The notes: generated from the letters alone by a model not told the origin. A stretch of 64,000 nt of DNA from Paramoeba atlantica (GCA_977017575.1 CDRNVI010000005.1:1-64000); one strand, 5' to 3'; counted from the stretch's first letter, positions 3,661-63,700 are shown. Translations and numbers: made by a program.

Positions 3661-4165
3661 AATTTTTGAAATTTTTAGGATTATCAAAAAACAATTGACC
3701 CAAAAAAAAGTAAAAATATGTTTCCAAAATCGACTCCTAAAACGTATTTTCAGAGCTTGAGACCTCAGCTACCATTCTACGACGTTTGTTTTTATAGATT
3801 CGCCTCCTACCCCTACTGGTAAGGCATCAAAAACGCCCCAAATTCGGGGTAAAATTTCCCAATTTTCGCCGAAAAATCGAGCGTTTTTATCCAAAAAACA
3901 GGGGTCTGAAAATATATTGTGCCCCCCCCACTTATTTGTCACCACTTTTTCGAAAACAGAACAATTTATTTGGTTAGATGAAACAAAAGTCCCAAACTTT
4001 TTTCTTTATTTTGGGAATCTCCAAAGCATTCGGATAAAGTTGGCTTCACATACCCGACTTATGTGACTTCCATAACTCCGCATTACCCAGTCCCAAGCCT
4101 GGGGAAGGACCACGTGCATACATAAACGTATACACATGGTCCGGGGGAGGAGGGTGGAAGAAGTT

Positions 4166-4857: not shown

Positions 4858-6099
4858 ATGGAAAAACCTCGCGAATGTCCGACGAGCCGCCGCCGGCGAA
4901 GTTCGATGCACAGGGTCCCTTCCCCCTCCCCAGAGCGGCCGCGTCGAACTCGTCGAGGGTCTCGTTTCCCGTCTTACTTAAATTCCACTTGTTCGTTCTC
5001 GCGGAGTTCAACCCGTAGCGAACGCCGTCAAAAGGAAGATATTAAGAAGGAAAAAGCTCGAGAACGACATGAAAGGTCATTGGGAACTGCATGTCGTCGC
5101 TTGCTCGAACAAGCGAGAAGCGAAATTGGAACGCCTGAGTGCCCGCAGGTGTCAAAATTTTTCATAGAAAAACTTCGTAATCTTCGAAACTTCCCCTTCG
5201 AGGGCGTCCACCCTGCATCCTGAGAGTATCAGGCCCTCGGAGGTGGACGCCCTCGAAAGCTTTCCGAGCCGTGCACACGCCGTGTGCGACGACTTGTGTT
5301 CTCCGGAAATTCTGCGCGAGAGGTATCATCTCAGCTGCGCCGCGAGGGCGTTGCTGATGTTGTTCCTCAGTCTATCCGAGTTTCGATGCACCGCTTCGGA
5401 CACAAAGGTAGAAAGCGTGTCCGCAAGCCCTACTTGTCCAAGCGCCATCGCAAGCTTCGGATGGACTTTGCCACGGCCCATGAGCACTCGACAGTGCACG
5501 ACTGGGCTCCAGTTGTATGGTCGGACGAGACGAAGATCTCGCGCTTTGAAACGGGGGGAAGTCTTTGGACATGGGGGACCCCGGGGGAGGAACTGGGTGA
5601 AAAAGGGGTAATTCCCACGGTAAAGTACGGAGAGGGGCACATCATGATTTGGGCGTGCATGTCCCGAAGCGGTGTGGGGCATGTGCGTCTAGTTCAAGGG
5701 AACCTGAACGCCACACAGTACGTCGAGATTCTTGAAGAGAATCTTGCCCCCTCCATCGAAACTATGGGTCTAGACCCCCCAATGGTCATCTTCCAACAAG
5801 ATAGTGACCCCAAGCACACAAGCCATTGTGCGCAACGGCACCTCCGGGGTACCGGGTTTGAAGTCATGCGGTGGCCCCCGCAGTCCCCTGACTTAAATCC
5901 AATCGAAAACGTTTGGGGGGAACTCAAGCGGCGCCTTGCAGCGCACGATGATCCACCAAGCGGGGTCCGAGAGTTGTGGGAGAGGGTAAAAATGGAATGG
6001 GCGAACATACCACCCTCAGTATGTCGTGCCCAGGTGGACAGTATGCCTGCCCGTATGAAGGCAGTGCTGAAGGCTCGTGGGGGGAATACTAAATACTAA
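4858..6099 (+). mobile_element. Tc1-family DD34E transposase with one in-frame TGA at 5221-5223
   Basis: GRPRKLS linker just after the TGA; WSDE / QQD(34 aa)E in SPDLNPIENVW; ORFs 4651..5223 and 5284..6099 are in the same frame. Confidence 0.9.
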
Positions 6100-49400: not shown

Positions 49401-49534
49401 GGTGGCTGACGGTAACTTGAACTTATAAACCTATATAACGATCGAACGAAATATTGCAACAACGTGCACCGAAAAAGAGGGATCGATCTGCGCGAATCTT
49501 GTTGTTTTATTTTCCTAATCTTTTTCGTCCAAAC

Positions 49535-51585
49535 ATGGGCATGCTCACGCGTGCCAAAGCAAAGGAGACTGGAGTAGCTCCCGTCATCCAGCCGTTGCCG
49601 CCCCGCCGAGCAAAGAAACAACCGATTCTACGAGAGGCAAACGAATCTTCATCGCCGACCCCAAGAGAATTGTCCGTACCAAACTCGCCGGCACCCTCAT
49701 CCGCGCCACTGTCCGCACCACCCTCACCCCAACAGGGGCCACGAACAACATCACCTGGCAATCCGCCGGTATCGATGACAGCACCTCTAGACAAACAAAC
49801 AACGCTGTCACCGCCAACAGAATCACCAACGGAAAAAACCTTACCTCTACCGCTCCCTCCGCCATCCGGGAACAAAGCTGTCAAACGGGGTTTTCGCATC
49901 TCCTTCAATGAGCTCAAAAAGCAAATCGAGGCGCGACAGGAGGAAGAAAGAAAAGTGAGAGAGAGCGAAGCAAAAGCGGCGGAAGCATCGAAACAGTCGA
50001 AAGCCAACTCATTTATCCGGATCCGCCGAACTGAGAGTTCTAGATTCACGCTTCCTTCGGCAACTACTGTTGTTCAGACCCTAAAACCCATTGCAAGCTT
50101 GATATCGAGCACGCTTCCTTCATTAACCGGTCTCTCGACTCCGACCGTCAAGTCGCCAATCCAGCGAGTTGAGATGCGACCAGAGGCCGCAACAGAGACG
50201 CGACCAGAGACCGCAACAGAGACGCGACAAGAAACCGCAACAGAGACGCTACCAGAGAACACAACAGAGATGCAACCAGAGACAAATACCGACTGCTATG
50301 TCATTTCTGAATCATTACGAACGATCTCGACCACACGAGAAACAGAGGTGAAGAACCCTAATAAGGTGGTGCTGAGGCGTGCCCGCAAATCTATGCCGCA
50401 GATAGTCAGCGAAAACATCTTGCGCGAAGACTCCAATGGCGTTGCAAACGAAGAGCGCAACTTTGGCGGAATACATCAACCTGAAAACTCCCCCTGTCTG
50501 TCTCACAGGTCCGCAGACGCGAGCGAAACCTTCTTTGATTGCGTTTCCCCGCTCACGATACAGGTGCCGGAAGGAAACACTTCGACATCAGATACACTGC
50601 ACGAAACGCTTGCAAGTTCAGAAGCAAACTCCTTGCCAGACCCCAATTCGTGCAACAAGGCCATTGTTCAACGTTGGGCAGGGTCAATTGATCCGGCTTT
50701 TAGCTTTCCAGTTGCGACGGATATGCTATGGGAAAGATCGAAAAACGCGAGGCCAAAAGAAGAATGCCTACTGGCGTGGAGCTTTGATAACCAAGCGCTT
50801 CTAAATATATCTCACGGAACTGTAAAATCAATAAAAAAACGTGCTGGAGTTGGAAAGCTATCAATGTCTTACGAAGGAATCGTGGGGCACATGGTATATA
50901 TATATATATCAGTCCGCAAGTGGTCGCAGCAATGCTCTACTTGTTATTATTATTCTCATTTTATCCTAACACAAAGCTCGCTGCGACAACACTACCCACG
51001 CGACTCCATCCACTTTTCCTTCTCGTACCGCCTCTCTTCAACCTTCTCCTGATTGAAAATATGCTTTGCGAATTCCTCAAATTAAATTAAATATAATTTC
51101 ATTCAATTTTTTGCCTATTGAAAATTACGATGCATTAGGAACAATCATACACATGCCCATTTGACATGGTTGGAAGTAAATTCGATGGTTTCCTACCGCC
51201 TCATCCGAACGTTCGCGTCTATGAAATATTTTGGCTAAAACATGCAAAACAACCTGAGATCGGGATGCACCAAGAACCGCGAACCAGGATACATACAGAA
51301 GAAGATTTGGATAAGAACCCCATGCCCACCATGCGGACAATTCCTGCGGAATTTGTGCCATGCGTAATTGCAATTTATCGTGACATCGTCCGCGACTACG
51401 CGGATTCATCATATGAACAACGAAATCGAATTTGGAATTGCATTCTATCTGCTATGAAGCATTCCCTGGCTACCATCCGCGACTTGAGCGGAAAAAAAGG
51501 CGACGACGTCCTTTACCTGATTCTGTTACAGGAGAAGAAAATAACGGGAAAAGCACGAGCGACACTGATGATACCAGAGCGATGA
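49535..51585 (+). mobile_element. Family-A non-LTR 5' half interrupted by a 268-bp insertion (50896-51163, TSD ACATGGT)
   Basis: YEGIVGHMV resumes as GSKFDGFLPP after the insert; CTTGTTG SL-end relic at 49498-49504. Confidence 0.85.
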
Positions 51586-51766
51586 AAAAGTATAAGTTTA
51601 CGATAAGAAATTTAGGAGACTTTATTTTGTTGATATGCAGATGGTGCCCCGAAAGGGGTCTAAACTGTTTTCAAATTCTACCCCGAAATGGGTCTAAACT
51701 ATTTATCTATGTACCAGGGATAGATTGAGGTAATTATAAATATACTGTATATTAGTGACATTTCCT

Positions 51767-51802
51767 CTTTAACGACAAAGATACAGTTTCTGTACCTTGT
51801 TG
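51767..51802 (+). other. Spliced-leader-like exon (36 nt visible), no intron
   Basis: GATACAGTTTCTGTAC core matches the trypanosomatid mini-exon core; same sequence at 57308-57343 and 60790-60821. Confidence 0.85.
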
Positions 51803-51839
51803 TGACATTTCCTCCTATAAACAACAAAAACGTTTTTCC

Positions 51840-52877
51840 ATGGCAGGTATTTTGAATACCGTGCGCCGAACACTCTCTATGGGCAGACAGGACAGTCCTC
51901 CACCAGTTGATCCTAACGACCCTGTGAGCCCATCTCTCCGACAAGGACGGGACCAGAGAAACACCCTGAACCCCGAGCAAGTGGCGGCTTTGCTTCGAGG
52001 TGGGGATGGCGCGGAGGCCATGTCAGAGGAATCGAAGATGGAGTTTGCTGCTAAAGTTAAATCTTTAGTAGCTCGAGGGTACCAGGTATCTGTTGAGGCC
52101 GTGTGGGGCCACGTAGGGGAAACTCATCGTCAAACGGTAGTGGGTAACATTTCTCTTAAGGGCGATGGATCGGGGTCCCTGGAGGCGAAGTGGTCCGACG
52201 AGCCAGGTATGGCATACGATTTCCCTTTCCCGGATATTAATTACTATTCCCTAGAGATCTCTAGTGTCCGAGCAGTCATGCCAGGGGGGCGGAAGACTGA
52301 AGATGGGCAAGCAACACCGCAGCTTGTGACTGACCCCGCCAAGTTCACGACTTATGAACCGTTGACCTGGGGGCCCTGGCTTGAATCCGAAGATGAGCTG
52401 CGCGTGAGGGATCTCATCCGAGATCTTAGGGCGGCACCGGAGTTTGGCTTGTTATTTCACCCCCCGCCCATCCGCGAGCGTCTCTTTAAGATTATTCAGG
52501 ATTGGGTGTATGCCGCTCGTATGTACCCAATATGGCGTGAAGAGTATTTTCTGAGCATTGTCCAAACAGCAATCGAAGAACTACGGAACCATTACTGGGC
52601 ATCTCAAGGCATTCCGATTGAAAATCTCCAGTTAAAGCTGCATAAGCACGACGACGCTAAGGACGCGTATACGAAGGCTGTCGCAGACGAGAAACTTCGA
52701 CAGTTGCGTACTCCCAAGGGGCCGGCCAAGCCTGCATTACTCTGCTACAAATGCCACAAGCCGGGCCACATCCGTGCGTACTGTCCGACCTTAAATCAAG
52801 CCCAGCAGCGCAGCTTCGCCACGGGTTTTCGCTCGGGGGTGACGAGCGGCACCGCTGGTGCAAAGAGGGGCCAATAG
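51840..52877 (+). CDS. Gag-like protein of YR element Y3
   Basis: C-terminal CYKCHKPGHIRAYC zinc knuckle; homologous to Y2 gag. Confidence 0.9.
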   Translation: MAGILNTVRRTLSMGRQDSPPPVDPNDPVSPSLRQGRDQRNTLNPEQVAALLRGGDGAEAMSEESKMEFAAKVKSLVARGYQVSVEAVWGHVGETHRQTVVGNISLKGDGSGSLEAKWSDEPGMAYDFPFPDINYYSLEISSVRAVMPGGRKTEDGQATPQLVTDPAKFTTYEPLTWGPWLESEDELRVRDLIRDLRAAPEFGLLFHPPPIRERLFKIIQDWVYAARMYPIWREEYFLSIVQTAIEELRNHYWASQGIPIENLQLKLHKHDDAKDAYTKAVADEKLRQLRTPKGPAKPALLCYKCHKPGHIRAYCPTLNQAQQRSFATGFRSGVTSGTAGAKRGQ

Positions 52878-55672
52878 GGAAGGCCCCCCACCCCTTATCT
52901 CGCTCGTGCCCGACCGTTTGTCAAACGGAGGGTGAAAAAACCAGGCTTTTTTGCACGTGCCCAGCTGCCGAAAACGCGGCGGGTGAACTTTTCAAACAGT
53001 TCTTGGCCTTCATCCGGGAATACGGATGCAAGTGTTCCGACCATTATACGGTCTGTAGTCCACGCGCCGAAGCGGGAGCGTCCAAATCCCGATCCCCGCG
53101 ACGTCGTCGGAAGCGAAAACATGAACGAACTGCAAGCAAAACGCAGACTGACATGCACTTTGTTGGGACTGGAACCGAGAATGCCGGTAGTCGAACCGAT
53201 ATGCCGCGCGATAGACCCCATGTGGACGACAGCCACCTGGATGACACGAAGTCGGTTGTGGGATCGACTGGCCCGCTTTTGCAACGCGGGAAACGCCCCC
53301 CTCGAACCCCTACACGCTGTAGTGTTCCTCGATCAGCTGAATCTTGCACCCGCAACACTTCTCGCATATGCACGAAGCCTCCAATCGATATTCAACCTCG
53401 CCCACAAACCCACAGGACCTCTACAGCTATACGCGAAAGCATTGCAAGCAAAGGGAGCGCTAGAACCAACCCGCCAAATGGAGCCCGCGACCCCATGGCA
53501 TATCAGAAAGTTGCGCGCCAAACTCATACCAAGGGATTCGATAGCGGTGTTGATCTGTTGGAAAGCCGCGGGCCGATGGACCGAGGTAGCCGAATTGACC
53601 AAAGACCGGTTTGTCAAGGTGGACGACAACGAAGTAATTGTGTATTGGGGGCGGCAAACGAAAACCACACGACTCAACCCGTATCGGTTATCCATGTGCA
53701 CAACGATAGTGGGTCCAGGGACTCCAGAGATAGCTCAACACGTCAGGCATATGATTGCAGGGCAGCGCATAAGCGCCACGACAGTACGGGAGATGGATCT
53801 CCGAATACGCAAGATTCTGGGCCCGAAATTCGGAACACATTCCATCAAGCGCGGAGCGGTAACGTACCTGTTTCAGGAGGTTGCTCTAGGAAGACTAACA
53901 ATATCAGACGTTCAAAATCTCGCAAAACATCAGCACATTACCTCCCTATTACGGTACAACGCAAACCTAGTGACCACCACGAGAGCGCTCGGTACACAGC
54001 GAGCTTCGGCTCTCCTGCAACTCCAATAACACAAGCTGATGTAGATAGGTGCCTCGAGCAGGTCCCACATGTTAAGCGGTATAGCATTATTTGTGCAAGG
54101 AGAACTTCGCGCTTAGCCAAGGCGCAGGACATGCATCACCCCTTACACGTTAAGACGGGAATTCCTACTATGGAACTGGATAAAGTTAAGTCTTGGATGA
54201 GGAATGACACGCGAAGCCGACTAGAGCGCATTATGAATAAAATGTTTTGCACCAAAGTACCACCACAGCCTGAACCATCCATTAAAGGGAATCTTCTTAC
54301 GAAGGACATCAACGAACTGATCACAGCGAATGTTATTCAACGAGTTTCGGATCAAATGGCCCGCGACATACCGACTATACAGTACCTCGTACCCTTTACG
54401 GTGGTGGAAGCTGACGAATCAGGGAAATCCAGACGACGTTTTATTTCATGGACTAAGGATGACAATGAACGTCTGAAGGAATATGATCCGCTCGTGCCGC
54501 TGCTCCATCCGGCGAAATACCTTCATCGTGTGGAAATGGAGGTCGGGGTGAAAAGAGATCTCAAATGTGGTTTCTATCAGGTCCCGGTCCCAGAGCGCGC
54601 GCGCGCGAAGTTTCGGTTTCGTGATTCCCAAGGAAATCTCTATCAGATGAAAGTTATGCCCATGGGGCATAGATGTGCCCCGGAAGTGATGCATACTATC
54701 ACGTCCGTGCTGGCCGGTGACCCGGGAGTGTGTAAACCGGAAGCGAGTTTTGCAAAGAGCAGTGTTGATATATATATCGACGGGATTCGCTACACAGCGA
54801 GCAAAGAGGAAGCCATTGGATATGCCAAGCGGATTGATTCCCGCTGTAGAGAAGCTAATGGAGCCTTTAAGGAGCATGGCTCACCCCCGGAACTGGAGTA
54901 TGTGTTTAATGGCTTAAACTACGATCATATAGTGCACAAGGTCAGCCTGGGACCTCGAGTACTACTGAAGTTACGTCGTGATCGATTTAACACTATTACG
55001 TACGCCCAATTGGAGACGGCGGTGGGGCGTCTCCTCTACGCCTCAGCAGTCCTTGGGTATGTTATTCCGCGTTTTCATTTTACGCTCAAAATTGCGAGGC
55101 GCCGTATTAATATGTTAAACCGAAATCTTCACCTAGCGGATAAGCCGGTACCTCTTCCTAAACCCACGAGATGCATCCTAGCCGATTGGCGGGACGAAGT
55201 GCTAAAGAATATACCCATTGAACCACCTCCGCACCCAGACGTCGTGCCCCATACGCACCGCCTATATACCGACGCATCGAGCAAAGGGTGGGGAGCAGTG
55301 CTATATCTCGATGACGGGGGGGTACAGATTACAGGTGACTCTTGGCCCAAAGAATTTAAATATGAGGTAAATCATGCCGAGGCCATGGCCGTAACCAATG
55401 CTTTGAAGGACTTCAAACATCACTTTGAGAAGGGGACGTGTATTGACTTATACATAGATAACACGTCTTGTCAGGGCGCCATTAATAAACGTATGGCGAA
55501 TTCCGATAATATCGCTAGCGAACTGAAGAAAGTTTTACTGATGAATCAGAATCAAGGGATTTGCATCAAAGCGCGATACATACGGTCCGAAGACAACCCA
55601 GCAGATCCCGTGAGTCGTTTAGATAGCCATACAAAATTTCATAATCTACAACAATTGGTCAGCCGCCACTGA
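52751..55672 (+). CDS. RT/RNase H ORF of Y3 (-1 frame, overlapping all of YR)
   Basis: RDLKCGFYQ, MPMGHR, YIDG, LYTDASS, EAMAV, YIDN, NPADPVSR; no internal stops. Confidence 0.92.
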   Translation: MPQAGPHPCVLSDLKSSPAAQLRHGFSLGGDERHRWCKEGPIGKAPHPLSRSCPTVCQTEGEKTRLFCTCPAAENAAGELFKQFLAFIREYGCKCSDHYTVCSPRAEAGASKSRSPRRRRKRKHERTASKTQTDMHFVGTGTENAGSRTDMPRDRPHVDDSHLDDTKSVVGSTGPLLQRGKRPPRTPTRCSVPRSAESCTRNTSRICTKPPIDIQPRPQTHRTSTAIRESIASKGSARTNPPNGARDPMAYQKVARQTHTKGFDSGVDLLESRGPMDRGSRIDQRPVCQGGRQRSNCVLGAANENHTTQPVSVIHVHNDSGSRDSRDSSTRQAYDCRAAHKRHDSTGDGSPNTQDSGPEIRNTFHQARSGNVPVSGGCSRKTNNIRRSKSRKTSAHYLPITVQRKPSDHHESARYTASFGSPATPITQADVDRCLEQVPHVKRYSIICARRTSRLAKAQDMHHPLHVKTGIPTMELDKVKSWMRNDTRSRLERIMNKMFCTKVPPQPEPSIKGNLLTKDINELITANVIQRVSDQMARDIPTIQYLVPFTVVEADESGKSRRRFISWTKDDNERLKEYDPLVPLLHPAKYLHRVEMEVGVKRDLKCGFYQVPVPERARAKFRFRDSQGNLYQMKVMPMGHRCAPEVMHTITSVLAGDPGVCKPEASFAKSSVDIYIDGIRYTASKEEAIGYAKRIDSRCREANGAFKEHGSPPELEYVFNGLNYDHIVHKVSLGPRVLLKLRRDRFNTITYAQLETAVGRLLYASAVLGYVIPRFHFTLKIARRRINMLNRNLHLADKPVPLPKPTRCILADWRDEVLKNIPIEPPPHPDVVPHTHRLYTDASSKGWGAVLYLDDGGVQITGDSWPKEFKYEVNHAEAMAVTNALKDFKHHFEKGTCIDLYIDNTSCQGAINKRMANSDNIASELKKVLLMNQNQGICIKARYIRSEDNPADPVSRLDSHTKFHNLQQLVSRH
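52932..54029 (+). CDS. Tyrosine recombinase of Y3 (in frame with gag)
   Basis: AGRWTE (R), HSIKRG (H..R), LAKH, RY catalytic residues. Confidence 0.92.
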   Translation: MKKPGFFARAQLPKTRRVNFSNSSWPSSGNTDASVPTIIRSVVHAPKRERPNPDPRDVVGSENMNELQAKRRLTCTLLGLEPRMPVVEPICRAIDPMWTTATWMTRSRLWDRLARFCNAGNAPLEPLHAVVFLDQLNLAPATLLAYARSLQSIFNLAHKPTGPLQLYAKALQAKGALEPTRQMEPATPWHIRKLRAKLIPRDSIAVLICWKAAGRWTEVAELTKDRFVKVDDNEVIVYWGRQTKTTRLNPYRLSMCTTIVGPGTPEIAQHVRHMIAGQRISATTVREMDLRIRKILGPKFGTHSIKRGAVTYLFQEVALGRLTISDVQNLAKHQHITSLLRYNANLVTTTRALGTQRASALLQLQ

Positions 55673-55717
55673 CTGATTGTTGCCGAAAATAGTTTTTACA
55701 AAAAAAAAAAAAAAAAA

Positions 55718-57056
55718 CGTACGAGATATCAGATGTGCGAACACGAACAAGATGGATATCTCAATGCGGGAAAGGGGCAAGCAGTTGGGCTTTTGTAACC
55801 CCGTCTAAGGACATGGGGTATTCCTTTACTCCTACAGAGTTTCGAACCTTGGCCCGCTGGTGGATAGGGATCGACGTCTACCCTGAAGAAGGGAAATGCC
55901 CTATGCCGAAATGTTCTCTCCCACTGGACACCAAAGGGGACCACGCATTGTCCTGCAAACACGGCAATGGAATTATCACGAGGCATAATGCCGTGGCAGA
56001 TCAGTTCGCCGACCTTTGCAGCAGAGCCAAACTGGCCCCACAACGAGAAAAAAGTCTTGGCAACAGAGGCCCAGGGGGCGCCCTCACCAGACCCGGCGAT
56101 GTCTATTTGCCCGGTCTCCAGTTGGGGAATCCGATTGTACTTGACTTCGCGGTCACCCATGCTCAGCAACTAAAACATACGGACAAAGTCCGGAATGCTA
56201 GCTGGGTAACCGCGGGGTCATTTGCTGAACAATATTCATCAACGCAAAAGGGCCAGCAGAGACACGAATCTGAAGAAGCCGGCTGTGCCTTCACCGCCAT
56301 GGTGGTGGAGAGCTACGGTGCGTGGAGCAGCAGTGCATCCGCAGTACTCCGTAAAGTTGGAGAACGGCTTTCGCACGCCTCGTGCGGGTTATTGACAGAA
56401 GGGGGGGCGACGAGCAGAATCTTCACGGAGTTAAACGTGACCCTCATGCGCCTTCAGGCCCGCATGATGGTTAATCGCCTTCTCCCTGATGACCCGTTTT
56501 CTTGCTTGGGGGAGTAAACGTTTCCTGACCGGACGGCAGTCAGCACAGACCCACGTTTGCGCCCTCATAGATGGCTGGCCTGGATGCTGGTCGATGCCGA
56601 CAGGGTCTATGCTCACGCCTAACCCTCAAGGGCTAGGTACTCCAAGTGAGGTAGGACATGGGTCGGGAACTAAAACTTCCTCCCCGTCGGCCAGCATCCT
56701 GTTTCGCGACCGTGTCGCTGTCGACACAGGCCCGCGCCTGCGCCCTCCCATATAACAAGGGAAGGGTTCACAAGTCAGGCCGTGGAGAGGTCGAAAGACC
56801 CGGTCCGGAACGCGCGAATGGATTGGGCATAGATTGCTTGTTTTTATTGTTATTGTTTTTATTGTTCTTATACTTACGGGAGATCGAATTGCTAGTTTTG
56901 GGCTCCAAAATATGAAATTGCTAATTTGATTGCTTGTTTTAAAATCATATACCCCCCCAATGGACCTACTTGGTTCGTCTAATGGGTCAAAATATAGAGG
57001 CAATGCCGCGATTCATACTTCTCCCCCCTTATTAATTGCAAAAAAAAAAAAAAAAA
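55718..57056 (+). mobile_element. 3' end of a CRE-like non-LTR element: CCHC/RLE, structured 3' UTR and polyA
   Basis: CPMPKC..GDHALSC..HN, RPGDVY..LDFAV; A-run at ~57039-57056. Confidence 0.9.
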
Positions 57057-57307
57057 CAGATGCGCTCAGTGACTTGGTCAAATAAGCAATAGCGGGGCTA
57101 TACATGTAGGTGTTTCAGTAGGTGGCCGCCACCATTTGCTGAAAACACATGCGCTCGGGTGGTAGTATTACGTGCGAGCGGGCTGGTTCGCGGAGTTGGC
57201 GGACGGGATGCCCGTTCGTAAGTAAAGGAGTTTGTTATCGATTTGTTTGAAATACTGTAAGTTTGATTGAAATGGCCAGGTACCTTTAAAAAAAAAGCGA
57301 TAAAGAT

Positions 57308-58077
57308 CTTTAACGATAAAGATACAGTTTCTGTACCTTGTTGAATTATTTCCCTTTTCTTCCATACACCATCTCCTCTACAATGGGAGGGCACCCCCCT
57401 CAATCACACTCTCTCTTGTCCGCACCCCCCCTCCGTCTCTCGTCCCATCACCCCCCTGCATCGTATTCCCCCACTTCGTCCTTCCCTCTCAGCGCGCTTG
57501 TCGTTCTGCTGTTTTCCTCTCTTGCGTCCCCCACCCCCGTGCCAGCAGCCCAAAGTATTGTATACTTGCTCACGGGGTGGGGGCAGAGGTCCAGACCGAT
57601 GGGCTCGTGCGTCGTTTCTCCTTGTCCCCGCGTCCGTTCCGCCTCGTCTCTCTTCCCGCTTTTTGCCCTTGGCGTGACGGCGGCTATGCGTTTCGTCATC
57701 TCCACGTCTCCCACCCTCGTACGGCAACCTAAAGTATCTGATACTGCTAACGGGGTGGGAGCGCAGGTCACCTCCACGTCTCCCACCCTCGTACAGCAAC
57801 ACAAAGTATCTTATACTGCTAACGGGGTGGGAGCGGAGGTCCTGGACCACATGGGCCACAGTGCGGACGAGTCGGTCAGTAGGGACGAGTCAGTCGGAAG
57901 GGAGTAAGTGGGGGAAGGGAAGTGAATGTAGTGAGGGGAAGGAAGTAGGGGAAGGAAGGAAGGAAGTAGGGGAAGGAAGGAAGTAGGGTGAAGGGTTTTA
58001 AGTGGTGGAAAGTTCGAAACGTACATAAAAACATTAGACTCAATACTACTCCCCCCAATTATATGCAAAAAAAAAAA
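57308..58077 (+). mobile_element. SL-headed, polyA-ended non-coding retroposon
   Basis: SL at 57308-57343, then AATTATTT; three hairpin repeats; A11 at 58067-58077. Confidence 0.65.
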
Positions 58078-58280
58078 TACTATATATACGTTCTTTAGTT
58101 ATTCATGCACACGTGTACGACGAGGACACGTGTTTGATGAGTGAAAGGGTGCTGTACTGTGGTTAGTTGCGTTGGGTGGTCGTGAGGGGATGGGAGGGAG
58201 AGTGAGGGAGTGAAGGGTGCGAGGAGAGTGGAGGTGTGTAACGAGACTTGGTGTGCGTGGTGACGTGCGAACGGGTTGGT

Positions 58281-58940
58281 TCGCGACGTGGTGGGCATAA
58301 CGCCCGTTCGTAAGTTACAGGGAATATTTGCTAGGTTAAAGAGCTCTGTTTTGTGATACTTGTGATAGTATATTTTATTGATTACAAAGGAAATGGGTAT
58401 AGCGGGATAAATCTTCTATTTATACATGGGAAATATTGATTTCTTTGTTTACCTTATTTTACGAAGTTTATAGCAGAAGAAAGGGTCCGTTGATTTCTAT
58501 AAGTTTACGATAAGAAATTTAGGAGACTTTATTTTGTTGATATGCAGATGGTGCCCCGAAAGGGGTCTAAACTGTTTTCAAATTCTACCCCGAAATGGGT
58601 CTAAACTATTTATCTATGTACCAGGGATAGATTGAGGTAATTATAAATATACTGTATATTAGTGACATTTCCTCCTATAAACAACAAAAACGTGCCCACC
58701 CACCCAACCCCCAACCATTTCGCGACGTGGTGGGCATAACGCCCGTTCGTAAGTTACAGGGAATGTTTGCTAGGTTAAAGAGCTCTATTTTGTGATACTT
58801 GTGATACTTAGTATATTTTATTGATTACAAAGGAAATGGGTATAGCGGGATAAATCTTCTATTTATACATGGGAAATATGGATTTCTTTGTTTACCTTAT
58901 TTTACGAAGTTTATGGCAGAAGAAAGGGTCCGTTGATTTC
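58281..58940. repeat. ~215-bp direct duplication (58281-58497 / 58720-58940) around an SL-free copy of the Y3 upstream region (58498-58693)
   Basis: Read directly; 58498-58693 matches 51591-51832 minus the SL insert. Confidence 0.9.
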
Positions 58941-60605
58941 GCAACAAAATTGGCTCTTGAAGGATGTGTGTCCAAAGCCACCCGTGTACTGGACCAGGAA
59001 GTCAAACAGTCATCACTAAGAGATGAAGAGAAGATGGAACAACTCCAACGATTGCACCCGCAAATTCCGGTGACGTTCGGGCTCCCTGCGGATGCACCGA
59101 AGATAGCTTGCATTGATCCTCACGAATTACGAGAAGCCGGGAAAAGACTAGCCAAAGGATCCTCACCTGGACCAACCGGAACAACCGACACCATCTTCCG
59201 ATTACTCTTAGATGATGAAATATGCTGTACGAGTCTGTGTCACATGATGTGCGACCTCATTAACGGGTTGCTCTCCAAAGAAGTTATGAAACGTCTGCGC
59301 AGAGCACGGTTAATAGCACTTCCGAAAAAGGCAGACGCAGTGCGTCCTATCGCGATGGGGGAAATATTTCTGAAACTAGCTGGACTTGTGTTGCTATTGC
59401 GAAATGAGCACTCGTTTGAAAGTTTATTTCTTCCGATGCAGCACGGCGTTATGAGTAAAGAAGGATGTGAGACCATTGTGCACGAGCTCAACCGTAGATA
59501 CCTTGAGGGCAACGCTATCCTTACCTTAGATTTAAAGAATGCTTTCAATAGCCTTTCAAAAGATGAGATTGCGAAGGCTGTATTTGCGTTCCATACTCTC
59601 CGTCCGTTCCAACGGTTCTTCACTGCAGAGTATGGTGATGCGTCAGAACTGCTCTTCTACGGAAAAAATGGTGAGCTTTTCGGGACTGTCAACAGTGCGG
59701 CTGGCGTGAGGCAAGGTTCTCCCTTATCGTCCTTATATTTCTGCACGCTCCTCCAACCCATTCTCGAGTCAATAGCGCAGGATTTCCCGACGATTCGCAT
59801 ATATGCATATGTGGACGATATTAACTTAACATCCCCAGATACGAATCTTCTCCAACAGGCGTACCATAAGTTGAAGGAAATGCTTGCCAAGCAAAACATT
59901 ATTATGGCACCAGAGAAATGCATTTGGTTTGGAGGCATCCATAAGCTAGAAAATCCCGATGGTCTGCGTTCAGAAGGAATTAAAACCGAACACGAAGCAA
60001 TAAAACTACTAGGGGCATATGTAGGAGAAACAAGCAAAGTAAGTGCACTCCTTCTAGAAAAACTAGAAAAACATAGAACCATCTTCCGCCGTCTCAAAAA
60101 AATGGGTGCGAACAACATCACTATGCTCCTCGCGCGATGCGTAAACGTTAGACACAGATATCATATCAGGGTGCACCGTCCCGAAGAATGCTTTGCACTT
60201 TCCAAGGGATTTGACAAAGAGGCAGAAAATGTTTTAAAAACCTGGCTTGGGCCACTTGATGAAAATCAAATAGCACTGGCAAGATTACCTGTCAAAATGG
60301 GCGGTCTTGGCCTGACCTCCTCGGTACTGCTTCGCAAATCGGCTTATGAGGCTTCGCAGCATGCTGCTCTTGAACGACTAAACTCTTTTTCAGTTCGGGC
60401 GGCAGCTCCAAAACCTCCTCAGCCAATTGGAAATGCAGAAGAAGGCAGCGCACGACCACCAAGCGATGAATATGTAACCGAAGCTATCCTGAACAAAGGA
60501 ATACGTGACACTCTAATGAAGGACAACAAATTGGCCCCCATTATTCGTTCGTCAAGTGAAAAAGGGAATTCGCAGTGGATTCACGCTAGCTCAACGGCAC
60601 AGTGA
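58940..60605 (+). mobile_element. Family-A non-LTR RT fragment
   Basis: SPGP, RPIAMGE, DLKNAFN, GVRQGSPL, AYVDD; close to ORF 22463. Confidence 0.92.
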
Positions 60606-60789
60606 CTTTCTCCCAACTTAGAAAGTACCTGGCGGACCAGCACACAATGGAATACGGGTTTTAGCTTTTCTGTTTTTAGTATCCCGGGTTTTTGATAACC
60701 GGCTCTGGGGCTTCGTGTTCTTGGGTTCCCCTTTTTGTTTATTACCCCCTTTTATTATAATTTTTATTATTACCCCCTTTTAAAAAAAA

Positions 60790-63700
60790 AACGATAAAGA
60801 TACAGTTTCTGTACCTTGTTGAATTATTTTCTTTTTCTTTGTCTGCTCTCTTTTTGATGGTAATGAACGAGACACACTCAGCCAACCATCCTGAGGATAC
60901 ACCTTTCGACCCTGGAATCATGGATTCTAATCAGAATTTTGTCCACGAAGAAAAATCCCATGAATTGGGTAGTTGGGACCAGTTTAAGGGCAACGAACAT
61001 CTTATCCGAAGCGCAAGCACCTATGACGAGAGCTTATACACTACTGCCATCCCGCAGAATATCCCGCACGATTGGATGCGCCGTGCGCACGCTTTAGAAA
61101 AGGATATTGAAACGCCCGACATGGGTCACGTACATGACCGAACTGAAGAGGAGGTCCATTGTAGTGTCCAGCGTGATATCGATAAGTCTAATAATGTTAA
61201 TTTCGAAGGAGCCGATTCGATTTCACACAGCCAACTAAGCACATTTAGCAAGGCTGCGAAGATGACCGATGAGTGCTCTAATGTCAATTCTGACGGAACC
61301 GATTCGACTTCACTCAGCCAATTAAGCACATCTAGCAAGGCTGTGAAGACCACTGATGAGGGTCCTACTGTCAACTTCGAGGGAACTGATGCGACTTCAC
61401 CCAGCCAATTGAGAAAATCCAATAAAGCTGTGAAGGCGAGATTTTTACGACACCTTCGAAACTCAGAACACTCTAATAACTGTTACGAATCCGAAAGCAG
61501 TACGGCCACGTTCCCAGACCTCACTCCGACGGACCTCGTTTCTCATTTCTCTGTTTCTAGAAGTCCAAAGAGGCGCAAGAACAAGAAGTGCTCTAAAAGA
61601 AATATCACCTCACAGACATCTTTGAACCAATCAGGCTCCGAAAGCACAGTAGCGACAGAGTCGGGTAGCGACGGAGTCTCCGTTGAACCGGCATCATCAC
61701 AAGATAGCTGCGTCACATCGGAAGTAAAGCTTAAGCGGAACCGAGCCACATTCAAATCCGAGCCTGTTAAATCACCCAACCTCACGCGGACTACAAAAAC
61801 ACCATATAACGCTAGAAAGTGTCCAGTGGAATCATGTTTGTGGCAAACCGGTCCTCATGGAAATCAATGGCAGGCGTATTATAATCACGCCTCAAACAGG
61901 CACGGGGCGGAAGTATCGGACACGTGGTGGGCAGAGGAGGGCAGATTTCGATGTGCATACTGCAAAAAACATTACCACTTAGGCAAAAAGGAGTCCCATA
62001 CGCGGCACTGCAAATTTCGTACACACGCATCCGATAACCCTCAGGATCCTTCCCGTGAGGTGAACGACTCCCCCAACCCTACCACAAACGCCGCTGTGAT
62101 GCCTGAACGCCCCCCCGGTACGAACCCTAATGATCGGCCCGATCAGATGGAGGATGTTGACAACTTGCTGCCGACCTTATCTTCTGTGTGCGCACTGCCG
62201 GTGATTACGAGCAAGGATATCCCTTATTGCTGCAGGGCTGAATGGGCACGAGTACTCACTTCCTGCTTGATGGCAGCCACGCTAGATAACACACTCGAGG
62301 CGTGGACTCTCCTTGCGATGCTTCCGAAATGTGTCCTTCCGGCCCCCCGCCGTGGAGGCAGTAAGAACAAAACCTCTTATGCGTCCTACGTCCGAAAATG
62401 TCTTTCCAGATGGAACCAAAAGGAGTACATACCACTCTGGAGTGAAGCAATCGCCAGTCTACAGCGCAAACGCAAATCCCCGGCGCAATCACTAGGCCCT
62501 CTTTTATTTTCTCTCGTCGCGAAGGAACTATTTACGGAAATCAAGAAGGCAGCCCCAAGGCTTGACTTAAACATGTGGTTCTTGGACGATGGGGTTCTGT
62601 CAGGCAAATCTTCAGACGTCAGGCATGCACTTGACGTAATTGCAGTCGAAGGTTCCAAGTGGGGCTTACATCTCAATGTTGCTAAATGTGAACTCATTAC
62701 GAATCCAGCTGCCTCTGACCGATTTGCTCTTTTCCCGGACATTCCTGGTCTGAACAAAAACACAGACGGCAATCTTGACATCTTGGGAAGCCCTATTGGA
62801 TCTACAAGCTTTTGTCACCGATACCTATTGGAAAATCCAATCAGTCTCGCTGAGGACTCACTAACAGCAATACAAAAGTTGGATGACCCTCAAGTGGCCC
62901 TATCGCTCATTCGTCATTGCACAGGATTTTGCAAAATGGTGTATGCTCTACGCACGACACCTACCGCGGAGCTACAAGACCTTTGCGAACGCCTGGACCG
63001 AGCAGTCCAAAACACGACGGAGCGCTTTATCGGTCCTTTGGGTGAATCGGCTCGACGACAGGCACAACGAGACAAACGACACGGAGGATTAGGGTTGAGG
63101 TCCGCTGCAACACACGCCACATCAGCATACGTATCTTCTGTAGCCTTTGCGTCTGCAAATGACCGTTGGGACCCCGCGCAAGCTGAGAGTTTTGAATTCG
63201 CAGTACGGGACGTCAATAGGCGCGCGGGCTATAACTTCGTTTCAAATATCGGGAGAATTCCAAAGCCCTCGTCCTCCCCACCTGAACAGTTGAACCCAGA
63301 GACAGCAAACTCCGACAATATCATCCCGGACGAAAGAATCCCAGAAGTTTTGCACCCCGACGACGCAGACCCTGAAGCCTCTCGCCCCGTACTGGTAATC
63401 CCGCGACAACGGGAATTAAGCCAGGCGATTTCAGCATCCCAATACTTGGCAGACTATAAAAAAGCAGATGACAAAACCAGAGCCCGATGGGTATCCCAAA
63501 CGGGAGAAGGGGCATCGGAGTGGGCCTTTGTGATTCCATCGAAGACCAGTGGTTTCGCTTTCACTTCCGCCGAGTTTCACACTCTGACGCGATGGTGGCT
63601 AGGGGAAAAAATTTACCCCAAGGCAAGACCCTGCCCTATGGACAAATGTGGGCTCCCGCTAGGCCCTGAGGGGGACCATGCACTTTCCTGCAAGAGTGGG

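What the first reader, a model, noticed from the sequence alone, without database searches (positions are those of the whole stretch)
51754..55717. An intact YR retroelement that looks like a processed mRNA: SL at the splice acceptor, polyA at the end
Seen: the SL (51767-51802) is joined to TGACATTTCCTCC..., 37 nt before the gag ATG, and A18 (55700-55717) lies 27 nt after the RT stop. An SL-free copy of the same upstream region (58498-58693) reads TATATTAG|TGACATTTCCTCC, so the SL sits exactly where AG is. The first 11 nt are duplicated before the SL (51756-51766). Inference: a trans-spliced, polyadenylated Y3 RNA was reverse-transcribed and rejoined to its own upstream sequence, so a YR element moved by a non-LTR-type route without its recombinase. 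Alternative: a lone SL inserted with an 11-12-bp TSD.
Basis: partly seen in the sequence, partly recalled or inferred. Interest (0 to 1): 0.85.

Follow-up and report, generated by a model that had tools for sequence, protein, structure and literature searches.

The report
Spliced leader trapped in VIPER-like retrotransposon
A complete tyrosine-recombinase (VIPER-like) jumping gene of a kinetoplastid-type protist carries a DNA copy of the cell's spliced leader inside its left repeat, so it was copied from trans-spliced RNA; the A-run taken for its poly(A) tail is an internal tract, and it did not move like a processed mRNA.

Summary
The sequence features are real. A 35-nt spliced leader (SL, 51768-51802) is joined to the element at the AG acceptor. 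It is flanked by a 12-nt duplication, and A18 lies 27 nt after the RT stop.

A18 is not the element's end. All ten copies of the two sister families that span this site (six Y3a, four Y3b) have an A-run there. In uninterrupted copies it runs straight into sequence that resumes in the window at 58078. Window 55718-58066 is a nested, poly(A)-ended LINE-type insertion.

Paralogous empty sites put the inserted unit at exactly 51591-58940, without target-site duplication, inside a LINE ORF. Its layout is gag, YR, RT/RNase H plus split direct repeats A1...B1-A2-linker-B2, as in VIPER/TATE.

Four independent SL|TGACATTTCC junctions exist in the genome. Three continue upstream into repeat A at different points, one across a 6-nt microhomology. 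The fourth has 13 nt of SL directly against flanking DNA.

Best reading: reverse transcription of trans-spliced element RNA, then an imprecise strand transfer that rebuilds repeat A. A LINE-style processed-mRNA route is not supported.

The scan already reported SL fossils in YR elements elsewhere in this genome.

The parts
51417..51590 (+). Left flank: ORF of the host LINE that Y3 interrupts
   Evidence: The frame stays open across the join 51590|58941 and gives a 607-aa ORF. The uninterrupted junction occurs 4 times in the genome and in read contigs.
51591..51755 (+). Repeat A1, upstream part ('U3'), ending in the AG trans-splice acceptor (51754-51755)
   Evidence: 51591-51767 is 100% identical to A2 at 58498-58674. 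A starts at TATAAG after a different flank in every copy.
51756..51767 (+). First copy of the 12 nt that follow the acceptor (TGACATTTCCTC)
51768..51802 (+). Captured spliced-leader exon, 35 nt. It lacks the extreme 5' nucleotides and has one T>C difference from the consensus.
   Evidence: The T>C variant occurs at only 3 places in the genome.
51803..51833 (+). Second copy of the post-acceptor sequence; the last 31 nt of repeat A1
   Evidence: 100% identical to 58663-58693.
51840..52877 (+). gag-like ORF (345 aa, CCHC knuckle), ending in TAG
52932..54029 (+). Tyrosine recombinase ORF, in frame with gag behind the TAG
   Evidence: Pfam Phage_integrase E=0.008 over almost the whole profile. A profile of 6 homologues hits Cre at E=3e-5 and a XerC-like recombinase. 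H-x-x-R and the catalytic Y are invariant.
52751..55672 (+). Overlapping ORF whose C-terminal half (about 54200-55672) is RT plus RNase H
   Evidence: Pfam RVT_1, RT_RNaseH.
55700..55717 (+). Left part of the element's internal A-run (A18)
   Evidence: An A-run of 13-26 nt at the homologous site in all 6 Y3a and 4 Y3b copies.
55718..58066 (+). Nested insertion of three poly(A)-ended retro-pieces: a LINE 3' part, a fragment of another YR family, and an SL-headed LINE 5' part
   Evidence: Absent from the C92 and C18 copies. Its internal A-run is at 57040-57056, with a short A9 tract just before the SL at 57309.
58067..58077 (+). Right part of the A-run (A11). It may belong to the tail of the nested piece.
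58078..58279 (+). Region Z, the element's 3' non-coding part
   Evidence: Follows the A-run directly in the C92 and C18 copies. About 85% conserved in Y3b.
58280..58497 (+). Repeat B1
   Evidence: About 98% identical to B2.
58498..58693 (+). Repeat A2, SL-free, with the intact acceptor
58694..58718 (+). 25-nt linker found only between A2 and B2
   Evidence: Analogous to the ~30-bp exclusive internal region of T. cruzi SIRE (PMC6681497).
58719..58940 (+). Repeat B2, ending in the canonical right terminus ..GGGTCCGTTGATTTC
   Evidence: The same terminus is followed by a different flank in every copy.
58941..60605 (+). Right flank: continuation of the host LINE ORF (RT domain)
   Evidence: RVT_1 E=6e-24. 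ORF continuity is and the empty sites.

Best explanation
Y3 is a complete, young VIPER-like tyrosine-recombinase retrotransposon occupying 51591-58940. Its layout is gag, a TAG stop, an in-frame YR, an overlapping RT/RNase H ORF, and split direct repeats A1...B1-A2-linker-B2. It inserted without target-site duplication into the ORF of a LINE.

Its RNA is trans-spliced at the AG inside repeat A, so the template RNA begins SL + last 31 nt of A and lacks the first 165 nt of A.

Inferred mechanism: during reverse transcription the cDNA ran on into the SL, to within a few nucleotides of the cap. Its 3' end then had to transfer onto another copy of A (A2 or a second template) to rebuild the missing part of A1. 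Normally the SL complement is not retained. Here the transfer landed 12 nt downstream of the acceptor at a short SL-like homology. This left A(upstream part)-12 nt-SL-12 nt... frozen in A1.

A18 is an internal A-tract of the element. It later received a nested 2.35-kb insertion of poly(A)-ended LINE-type pieces.

Shown: the element's boundaries, repeats and ORFs, the internal nature of the A-run, and the recurrence of SL junctions. Inferred: the order of the template switches and the nature of the acceptor.
For: 1. Boundaries. Read contigs join 51590 directly to the sequence starting at 58941. The genome holds 4 uninterrupted paralogous junctions. The host ORF is open across the join. There is no TSD.

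2. Architecture.
- A1 and A2 are 100% identical, and B1 and B2 about 98%.
- The same A1...B1-A2-B2 layout occurs in sister family Y3b, about 72% identical.
- The termini TATAAG... and ...GATTTC abut different flanks in every copy.
- This matches the published VIPER/TATE layout: SDRs, SIRE = A2+B2, no TSD (PMC6681497; PMC12278014).

3. The A-run is internal.
- It is present in all 6 Y3a and 4 Y3b copies.
- It is followed directly by Z-B1 in the C92 and C18 copies.
- It is interrupted exactly there by poly(A)-ended pieces in 4 of 6 Y3a copies.

4. The SL comes from trans-spliced RNA.
- There are 743 dispersed copies of the SL 3' 20-mer.
- SL RNA genes carry the intron GTATGAGAAGCT.
- The genome has exactly four SL|TGACATTTCC junctions: the window; C18:236710 in Y3b, with a 13-18-nt duplication and a 6-nt CTTTAA overlap; C66, where A[1-90] plus a stutter precedes the SL; and C1:216707 in Y3b, where 13 nt of SL abut flanking DNA and the copy runs through both A-runs to a canonical B2 end.
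- That is 4 of about 11 5' ends in these families.

5. SL 5' ends in retrocopies are ragged and stuttered genome-wide, as expected for an RT pausing near a modified cap.
Against: - No RNA data cover Y3. No run is on record as RNA, and the one possible RNA run shows the SL only on another transcript.
- The acceptor of the strand transfer, and why synthesis stops at the first base of A, are inferred.
- The junction in the window has only 1-2 nt of microhomology.
- A non-YR 5.1-kb tandem unit shows a similar 34-nt-SL-34-nt layout, so the process may not be specific to the element's own cycle.
- B1 and B2 of the window copy differ by about 2%, although A1 = A2.
- The SL-bearing junction itself was not seen in an independent read contig; only SL-free forms are listed.
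Confidence: 0.65

Rival explanations
1. First reader's model. A trans-spliced, polyadenylated Y3 mRNA (SL...A18) was retroposed by a non-LTR (LINE, target-primed) route and landed next to its own upstream sequence, without the recombinase.
For: The SL is at the acceptor and an A-run lies 27 nt after the RT stop. This genome does make SL-headed, poly(A)-tailed retrocopies in trains, including fragments of YR elements.
Against: - The A-run is in every SL-free copy and in a family about 72% identical.
- The copy continues to Z-B1-A2-B2 after a nested insertion.
- Empty sites put the 3' boundary at 58940, with no poly(A) at the junction and no TSD.
- The 165 nt upstream of the acceptor are an integral part of A1, with the canonical left terminus.
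Confidence: 0.04
2. A lone SL (a 35-nt cDNA of the mini-exon) was inserted into a resident Y3 copy by a staggered cut that made a 12-bp target-site duplication.
For: A perfect 12-nt direct repeat flanks the SL. From my own recollection, not checked here: 12-bp TSDs are typical of ingi/L1Tc-type LINEs.
Against: - The duplication starts exactly at the AG acceptor, and the SL 3' end is joined exactly to the exon start.
- The same SL|R junction recurs in three other copies with a different left side: a 13-18-nt overlap, a junction at position 90 of A, and no A at all.
- A 35-nt exon without intron or tail is not a plausible target-primed template.
Confidence: 0.04
3. Post-integration conversion. 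A partial SL-bearing cDNA of Y3 mRNA, made by any cellular RT such as a LINE RT with template switching, recombined with an already integrated SL-free copy. It was homologous on its right side and joined by microhomology on its left.
For: A similar duplication-SL-duplication layout (34 nt) occurs in every unit of a 5.1-kb tandem array with no recognisable YR or RT genes in the 3 kb I could read. LINE RTs are abundant here.
Against: - The C1 copy has the SL remnant at the very left end of the inserted unit, with no repeat upstream. Conversion of a resident copy does not explain that.
- About 4 of 11 young 5' ends in these two families carry the SL.
- All the junctions lead into repeat A, which the element's own cycle must copy at that step.
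Confidence: 0.2
4. The SL-bearing junction is an assembly or chimeric-read artefact.
For: Contigs of the three DNA-like runs that are listed across this site show the 47-nt-shorter, SL-free form.
Against: Those contigs can come from the SL-free paralogues at 97-99% identity. Four different loci carry SL|R junctions, each with its own left side. The surrounding repeat is 100% identical to A2.
Confidence: 0.03

Closest known systems
VIPER / TATE (VIPER-like tyrosine-recombinase retrotransposons of kinetoplastids) and the SIRE module
   Same: - A gag-like ORF, then YR, then an overlapping RT/RNase H ORF.
- Split direct repeats A1...B1-A2-B2.
- A short exclusive linker between A2 and B2, as in SIRE.
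- No target-site duplication.
- Occurrence in a kinetoplastid-type genome.
   Different: - DNA copies of the host spliced leader are embedded inside A1.
- There is an internal A-run after the RT stop that acts as a landing pad for LINEs.
- The number of A-linker-B modules at the right end varies from 0 to 2.
- Neither the two VIPER/TATE papers I read nor my searches gave any report of SL capture in VIPER or TATE.
- Phylogenetic placement with named VIPER sequences was not tested.
Relict spliced leaders in dinoflagellate retrogenes
   Same: A DNA-encoded SL at the 5' end of a sequence shows that it was copied from trans-spliced RNA (papers listed, e.g. PMC6050394).
   Different: There the SL heads processed host-gene retrocopies. 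Here it lies inside the terminal repeat of an autonomous recombinase retrotransposon, between two copies of the post-acceptor sequence, with the upstream repeat rebuilt.
Minus-strand strong-stop transfer of LTR retroelements and retroviruses (R-mediated)
   Same: The part of the left repeat that the RNA lacks is restored from the downstream repeat. A1 = A2 in young copies, like LTR identity.
   Different: The 5' end of the RNA is set by trans-splicing, not by a promoter in the repeat. The repeats are split (A, B), not LTRs. Integration leaves no TSD. The transfer mechanism here is inferred only.
SLACS / CZAR / CRE site-specific LINEs of SL RNA genes
   Same: Retroelements physically associated with SL sequence in kinetoplastids.
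   Different: Those insert into the SL RNA gene at a fixed position. Here the SL is joined to the element at a splice acceptor and is not followed by the SL intron.

Membership tests
VIPER-like YR retrotransposons (VIPER/TATE, order DIRS) | Encodes a gag-like protein, a tyrosine recombinase and RT/RNase H, in that order, with overlapping YR and RT ORFs | tested here: met
   RT and RNase H are. YR: Pfam E=0.008, family profile against Cre E=3e-5, invariant HxxR and Y.
VIPER-like YR retrotransposons (VIPER/TATE, order DIRS) | Split direct repeats A1 at the 5' end and B1-A2-B2 at the 3' end | tested here: met
.
VIPER-like YR retrotransposons (VIPER/TATE, order DIRS) | No target-site duplication on insertion | tested here: met
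   Empty site ..GAAAAAG|GCAACAAAA.. against the filled site.
VIPER-like YR retrotransposons (VIPER/TATE, order DIRS) | RT groups phylogenetically with VIPER/TATE | not tested
   No named VIPER or TATE sequence was available by reference. The nearest outside homologue is an unnamed EukProt transcript at 42% identity.
LINE-mediated processed retrocopy | The 3' end is a poly(A) tail abutting flanking DNA | tested here: not met
   The A-run is internal, and the right end is ..GATTTC at 58940.
LINE-mediated processed retrocopy | Target-site duplication flanking the whole insert | tested here: not met
LINE-mediated processed retrocopy | The copy starts at the RNA 5' end (SL) without upstream, non-transcribed or spliced-off sequence | tested here: not met
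   165 nt of repeat A plus a 12-nt duplication precede the SL. By contrast the C1 Y3b copy does start in the SL.
SL-relic retrocopies (copied from trans-spliced RNA) | The SL exon is joined to downstream sequence exactly at an AG acceptor seen in an SL-free copy, without the SL intron | tested here: met

The most novel reading that the evidence does not exclude
The SL-in-repeat junctions are frozen strand-transfer products.

On this reading, VIPER-like elements of this protist replicate from SL-trans-spliced RNA that runs from the acceptor in A1 to the end of B2. They rebuild the spliced-off part of A1 from A2, and they integrate a linear cDNA that carries a variable number of A-linker-B modules.

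The position of each junction (12 nt, 13-18 nt, position 90, or none) would then record where the cDNA end re-annealed. That would be the first sequence-level view of how split-direct-repeat YR retrotransposons regenerate their ends, in an organism where trans-splicing replaces a promoter-defined start.
Probability: 0.45. Interest if true: 0.65.

Novelty: new variant of a known kind. Interest (0 to 1): 0.5.

Why it matters
The replication mechanism of split-direct-repeat tyrosine-recombinase retrotransposons (VIPER, TATE, Ngaro, PAT) has been inferred rather than observed.

In a trans-splicing organism the SL tags the exact 5' end of the RNA that was copied. These junctions therefore show three things: which RNA is the template, that the missing part of the left repeat is rebuilt afterwards, and that the rebuilding step is error-prone.

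The finding also corrects the local annotation. Y3 is one 7.35-kb insertion, with a nested LINE train, inside a LINE. It is not the first car of a train of processed cDNAs.

It is not a case of a recombinase element hijacking the LINE pathway, which would have been the more surprising claim.

Tried and rejected
- Rfam found nothing, either on the whole window at gathering thresholds or on 58000-59000 at E<=5. No ribozyme was detected that could define the left end of A.
- Folding of repeat A shows no unusual stability (z = -0.58).
- I tested whether the first ~40 nt of A are a degenerate SL. The local alignment is not better than shuffles (p about 0.1). Rejected.
- RNA evidence is lacking. No run is on record as RNA. 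The one possible RNA run (X4) has the SL on another transcript and nothing on Y3.
I could therefore not read the true 5' end of the SL RNA gene. One gene-like copy has ..GCGAG before CTTTAACG, while retrocopies mostly have T or A there.
- No empty site was found for the host of the C1 Y3b copy, in the genome (exact pattern) or among the fetched loci. Its left boundary is inferred from the sequence alone.
- Searching the single YR sequence against PDB gave nothing. The 6-member profile was needed.
- Pfam found nothing on the ORFs of the 5.1-kb tandem unit L001.
- A literature search for the SL string gave 0 papers. Searches combining spliced leader with tyrosine recombinase or retrotransposon found no description of SL capture in YR elements. 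The PNAS 2000 VIPER/SIRE paper is not held.
- A-run lengths were not used as evidence for or against a fresh poly(A) tail. Two copies that appear to be duplicates of one locus differ (A24 vs A20), and the two A-runs of Y3b copies are suspiciously equal within a copy.


Full report
**1. What is in the sequence**

The window reads ..TATATTAG | TGACATTTCCTC | 35-nt SL (51768-51802) | TGACATTTCCTCCTATAAAC..ACGT, followed by the gag ATG at 51840. A second SL-free copy of the same 196 nt at 58498-58693 reads ..TATATTAG|TGACATTTCCTCC... The SL is therefore joined exactly behind an AG, and the 12 nt that follow the AG are present twice.

The 35-mer is not expected by chance: 0 matches in 100 shuffles, against 2 copies found at up to 3 mismatches, and a third copy that lacks the first few SL bases lies at about 60790.

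A18 lies at 55700-55717, 27 nt after the stop of the RT/RNase H ORF.

**2. The SL is the organism's real spliced leader**

- The last 20 nt of the SL occur 743 times in the 45.7-Mb assembly, joined to many different sequences.
- 49 copies are followed by GT. Several of them, including copies spaced 2.6-2.9 kb apart on C11, continue GTATGAGAAGCTTCGAAC.
- The core ACAGTTTCTGTAC and this intron start are, from my own knowledge, the conserved kinetoplastid type.
- A contig of a possible RNA run carries the SL joined to an unrelated transcript.
- Genomic SL copies start raggedly around CTTTAACG. They often show stutters such as TTTAACGATAA-CTTTAACGATAAAG. That is what an RT pausing near a modified cap would leave.

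**3. What Y3 is**

- *Coding regions.* gag (51840-52877, CCHC knuckle) ends in TAG. The same frame continues into an ORF (52932-54029) with a weak but near full-length Phage_integrase match (E=0.008).
- *YR support.* A profile of six homologues from this genome hits Cre recombinase (E=3e-5) and a XerC-like recombinase. H-x-x-R and the tyrosine are invariant.
- *RT/RNase H.* An overlapping ORF (52751-55672) carries RT and RNase H in its C-terminal half.
- *Repeats.* A1 (51591-51833, including the SL) is matched by A2 (58498-58693). B1 (58280-58497) is matched by B2 (58719-58940), with a 25-nt linker between A2 and B2.
- *Comparison with the literature.* This is the split-direct-repeat layout published for VIPER and TATE. 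There SIRE equals A2 plus a ~30-bp exclusive region plus B2, and insertion makes no TSD (PMC6681497; PMC12278014).
- *Sister family.* Y3b is about 72% identical in DNA and has the same layout.

**4. A18 is internal, not the end**

- Five other Y3a copies (97-99% identical) all have an A-run of 13-24 nt at the same place.
- The four Y3b copies have two A-runs 58 nt apart. The second is followed by sequence homologous to that after the Y3a run.
- In the C92 and C18 copies the A-run is followed at once by CTATATATACGTTC... That sequence is window 58078 onward and leads into B1.
- Window 55718-58066 is therefore a nested insertion. It consists of three pieces, each ending in an A-run:
  - a LINE 3' part, 94.7% identical to another copy;
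  - a fragment of another YR family;
  - an SL-headed LINE 5' part.
- The C75, C12 and C2 copies are also interrupted exactly in this A-run. The tract is a recurrent landing pad for poly(A)-ended elements.

**5. The boundaries of the inserted unit**

- Contigs of three runs end their match at 51590 and continue GCAACAAAATTGGCTC... That is the sequence starting at 58941.
- The uninterrupted junction CAGAGCGATGAAAAAG|GCAACAAAATTGGCTC occurs four times in the genome.
- The reading frame is open across the join. It gives a 607-aa ORF whose downstream part has a strong RVT_1 match.
- Y3 is therefore one insertion, 51591-58940, into a LINE ORF, with no TSD.
- Every copy begins TATAAGTTTACG.. and ends ..GGGTCCGTTGATTTC next to different flanks.
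- This excludes the processed-mRNA reading. There is no poly(A) at the 3' junction and no TSD, and 165 nt of spliced-off sequence are present upstream of the acceptor.

**6. SL capture is recurrent**

Exactly four SL|TGACATTTCC junctions exist in the genome.

| Copy | Family | What lies left of the SL |
|---|---|---|
| Window (C5) | Y3a | A up to 12 nt past the AG |
| C18:236710 | Y3b | A up to 13-18 nt past the AG; element and SL share CTTTAA at the junction (6-nt microhomology); A1 otherwise 100% = A2 |
| C66:304337 | Y3a | The first 90 nt of A, then the stutter ACGATT |
| C1:216707 | Y3b | Only the last 13 nt of the SL, directly against foreign DNA (another YR element); no upstream part of A |

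- The C1 copy runs through both A-runs, B1, A2 and B2 to the canonical right end.
- The window's SL differs from the consensus by one T>C that is rare in the genome. It also differs from the Y3b junction by one base, so the events are independent.
- About 4 of 11 5' ends in these two families carry the SL.

**7. Mechanism**

*Shown:*
- Y3 RNA is trans-spliced at this AG, and such RNA is reverse-transcribed into genomic copies.
- The C1 copy indicates that an SL-bearing template extends through the A-runs to the end of B2.
- In three of the four events the cDNA continues from the SL into repeat A, at different positions.

*Inferred:*
- The spliced RNA lacks the first 165 nt of A, so these must be recopied from another A (A2 of the same RNA, a second RNA, or a plus-strand primer product starting at the first base of A).
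- This step resembles retroviral strong-stop transfer. It would explain why A1 = A2 in young copies.
- When the cDNA has run into the SL, its 3' end no longer matches. It is either trimmed (SL-free copies) or re-anneals at a short SL-like homology just downstream of the acceptor. That duplicates 12-18 nt and traps the SL.
- The variable number of A-linker-B modules (none in the C18 copy, one in most, two in one Y3b copy) also points to a jump-prone synthesis.

*Main rival:* recombination of a partial SL-bearing cDNA with a resident copy after integration. I cannot exclude it for the window copy. A similar 34-nt-SL-34-nt layout in a 5.1-kb tandem unit of unknown nature keeps it alive.

**8. Comparison and novelty**

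- By all structural criteria tested, the element is VIPER-like. Phylogenetic placement was not tested. The best outside RT homologue is an unnamed transcript at 42% identity.
- SL relics are known for dinoflagellate retrogenes.
- I found no paper describing SL capture inside the repeat of a YR retrotransposon.
- Within this scan the same phenomenon was already reported on other DNA of this genome (s1-381664, s1-381643, s1-369850, s1-369998). SL-headed retroelements in general were also reported. Those are unchecked AI notes, not independent evidence.
- This window adds four things:
  - the empty-site proof of the element's boundaries;
  - the demonstration that the A-run is internal and a LINE landing pad;
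  - the four-junction comparison;
  - the copy that starts in the SL.

**9. Verdict**

- The finding is of moderate interest. It is a new variant of a known kind.

Noticed in passing
window 49454-51590 and 58941-60791: These two stretches are one LINE, split by the Y3 insertion. The ORF is continuous across the join, has a strong RVT_1 match, and the element ends in an A-run at 60782-60791.
   Followed up: yes
window 55700-58077; L034 5010-5541; L035/L036 about 3738-3830: The internal A-run of Y3a is interrupted by poly(A)-ended retro-pieces in 4 of 6 copies (window, C75, C12, C2). It acts as a landing pad for LINE-type insertions.
   Followed up: partly
L039 5625-5718; L040 5577-5686; L042 5427-5536; L041 5577-5681: Y3b copies have two A-runs 58 nt apart. 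Their lengths are equal within a copy (18/18, 26/26, 26/26; one is 20/26) but differ between copies. This is unexplained. It may be a homopolymer-calling artefact or some concerted process.
   Followed up: no
L032 (reverse strand) about 1440-1501 = G000:C92 just upstream of the Y3a copy: A partial SL (from CGATAAAG to CCTTGT) is followed by two stuttered ATACAG(A)ACCTTGT units. It abuts repeat A1 at its 4th base and replaces the usual TAT. This looks like another template-switch junction involving the SL, this time at the left terminus.
   Followed up: partly
L001-L004 = G000:C1:8252-26549 (5093-bp tandem units): Every unit carries CAG | 34 nt | TGA + SL | the same 34 nt, followed by a 127-aa ORF without a Pfam match. 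It has the same duplication-SL-duplication layout as Y3, in a unit with no YR or RT similarity in the 3 kb I could read.
   Followed up: partly
L040 5896-6987; L033 (reverse strand) about 5988-6010: The number of A-linker-B modules at the right end varies. One Y3b copy has B-A-B-A-B. The C18 Y3a copy ends after B1 with no A2-B2, yet has the canonical ..GATTTC terminus.
   Followed up: partly
L010, L012-L014 = G000:C1:122810, 129223, 147450: Poly(A), then a partial SL, then TTAAAAA, then a full SL joined to an internal point of an RT/RNase H gene of another YR family. This looks like a processed, SL-headed retrocopy of a YR-element fragment lying in a poly(A) train.
   Followed up: no
L011, L013 = G000:C1:127719 and 146675: Another YR family has the SL about 370 nt upstream of its gag. 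In both copies the SL is preceded by the same 14 nt (TCTTCAACTTGAAA) and then by different flanks. An SL-bearing left end seems to have been propagated.
   Followed up: no
G000:C97:349-28637 and C107:1828-22429 (not fetched): Arrays of SL followed by GT, spaced about 2.56 kb, are probably the SL RNA gene arrays. The intron start GTATGAGAAGCTTCGAAC was read at C3, C6, C11 and C24.
   Followed up: partly
window 52875-52934: The gag TAG is followed in the same frame, without a further stop, by the YR ORF, while the RT ORF overlaps in another frame from 52751. Both a readthrough and a frameshift arrangement are possible. Earlier notes s1-389445 and s1-389655 address this.
   Followed up: partly
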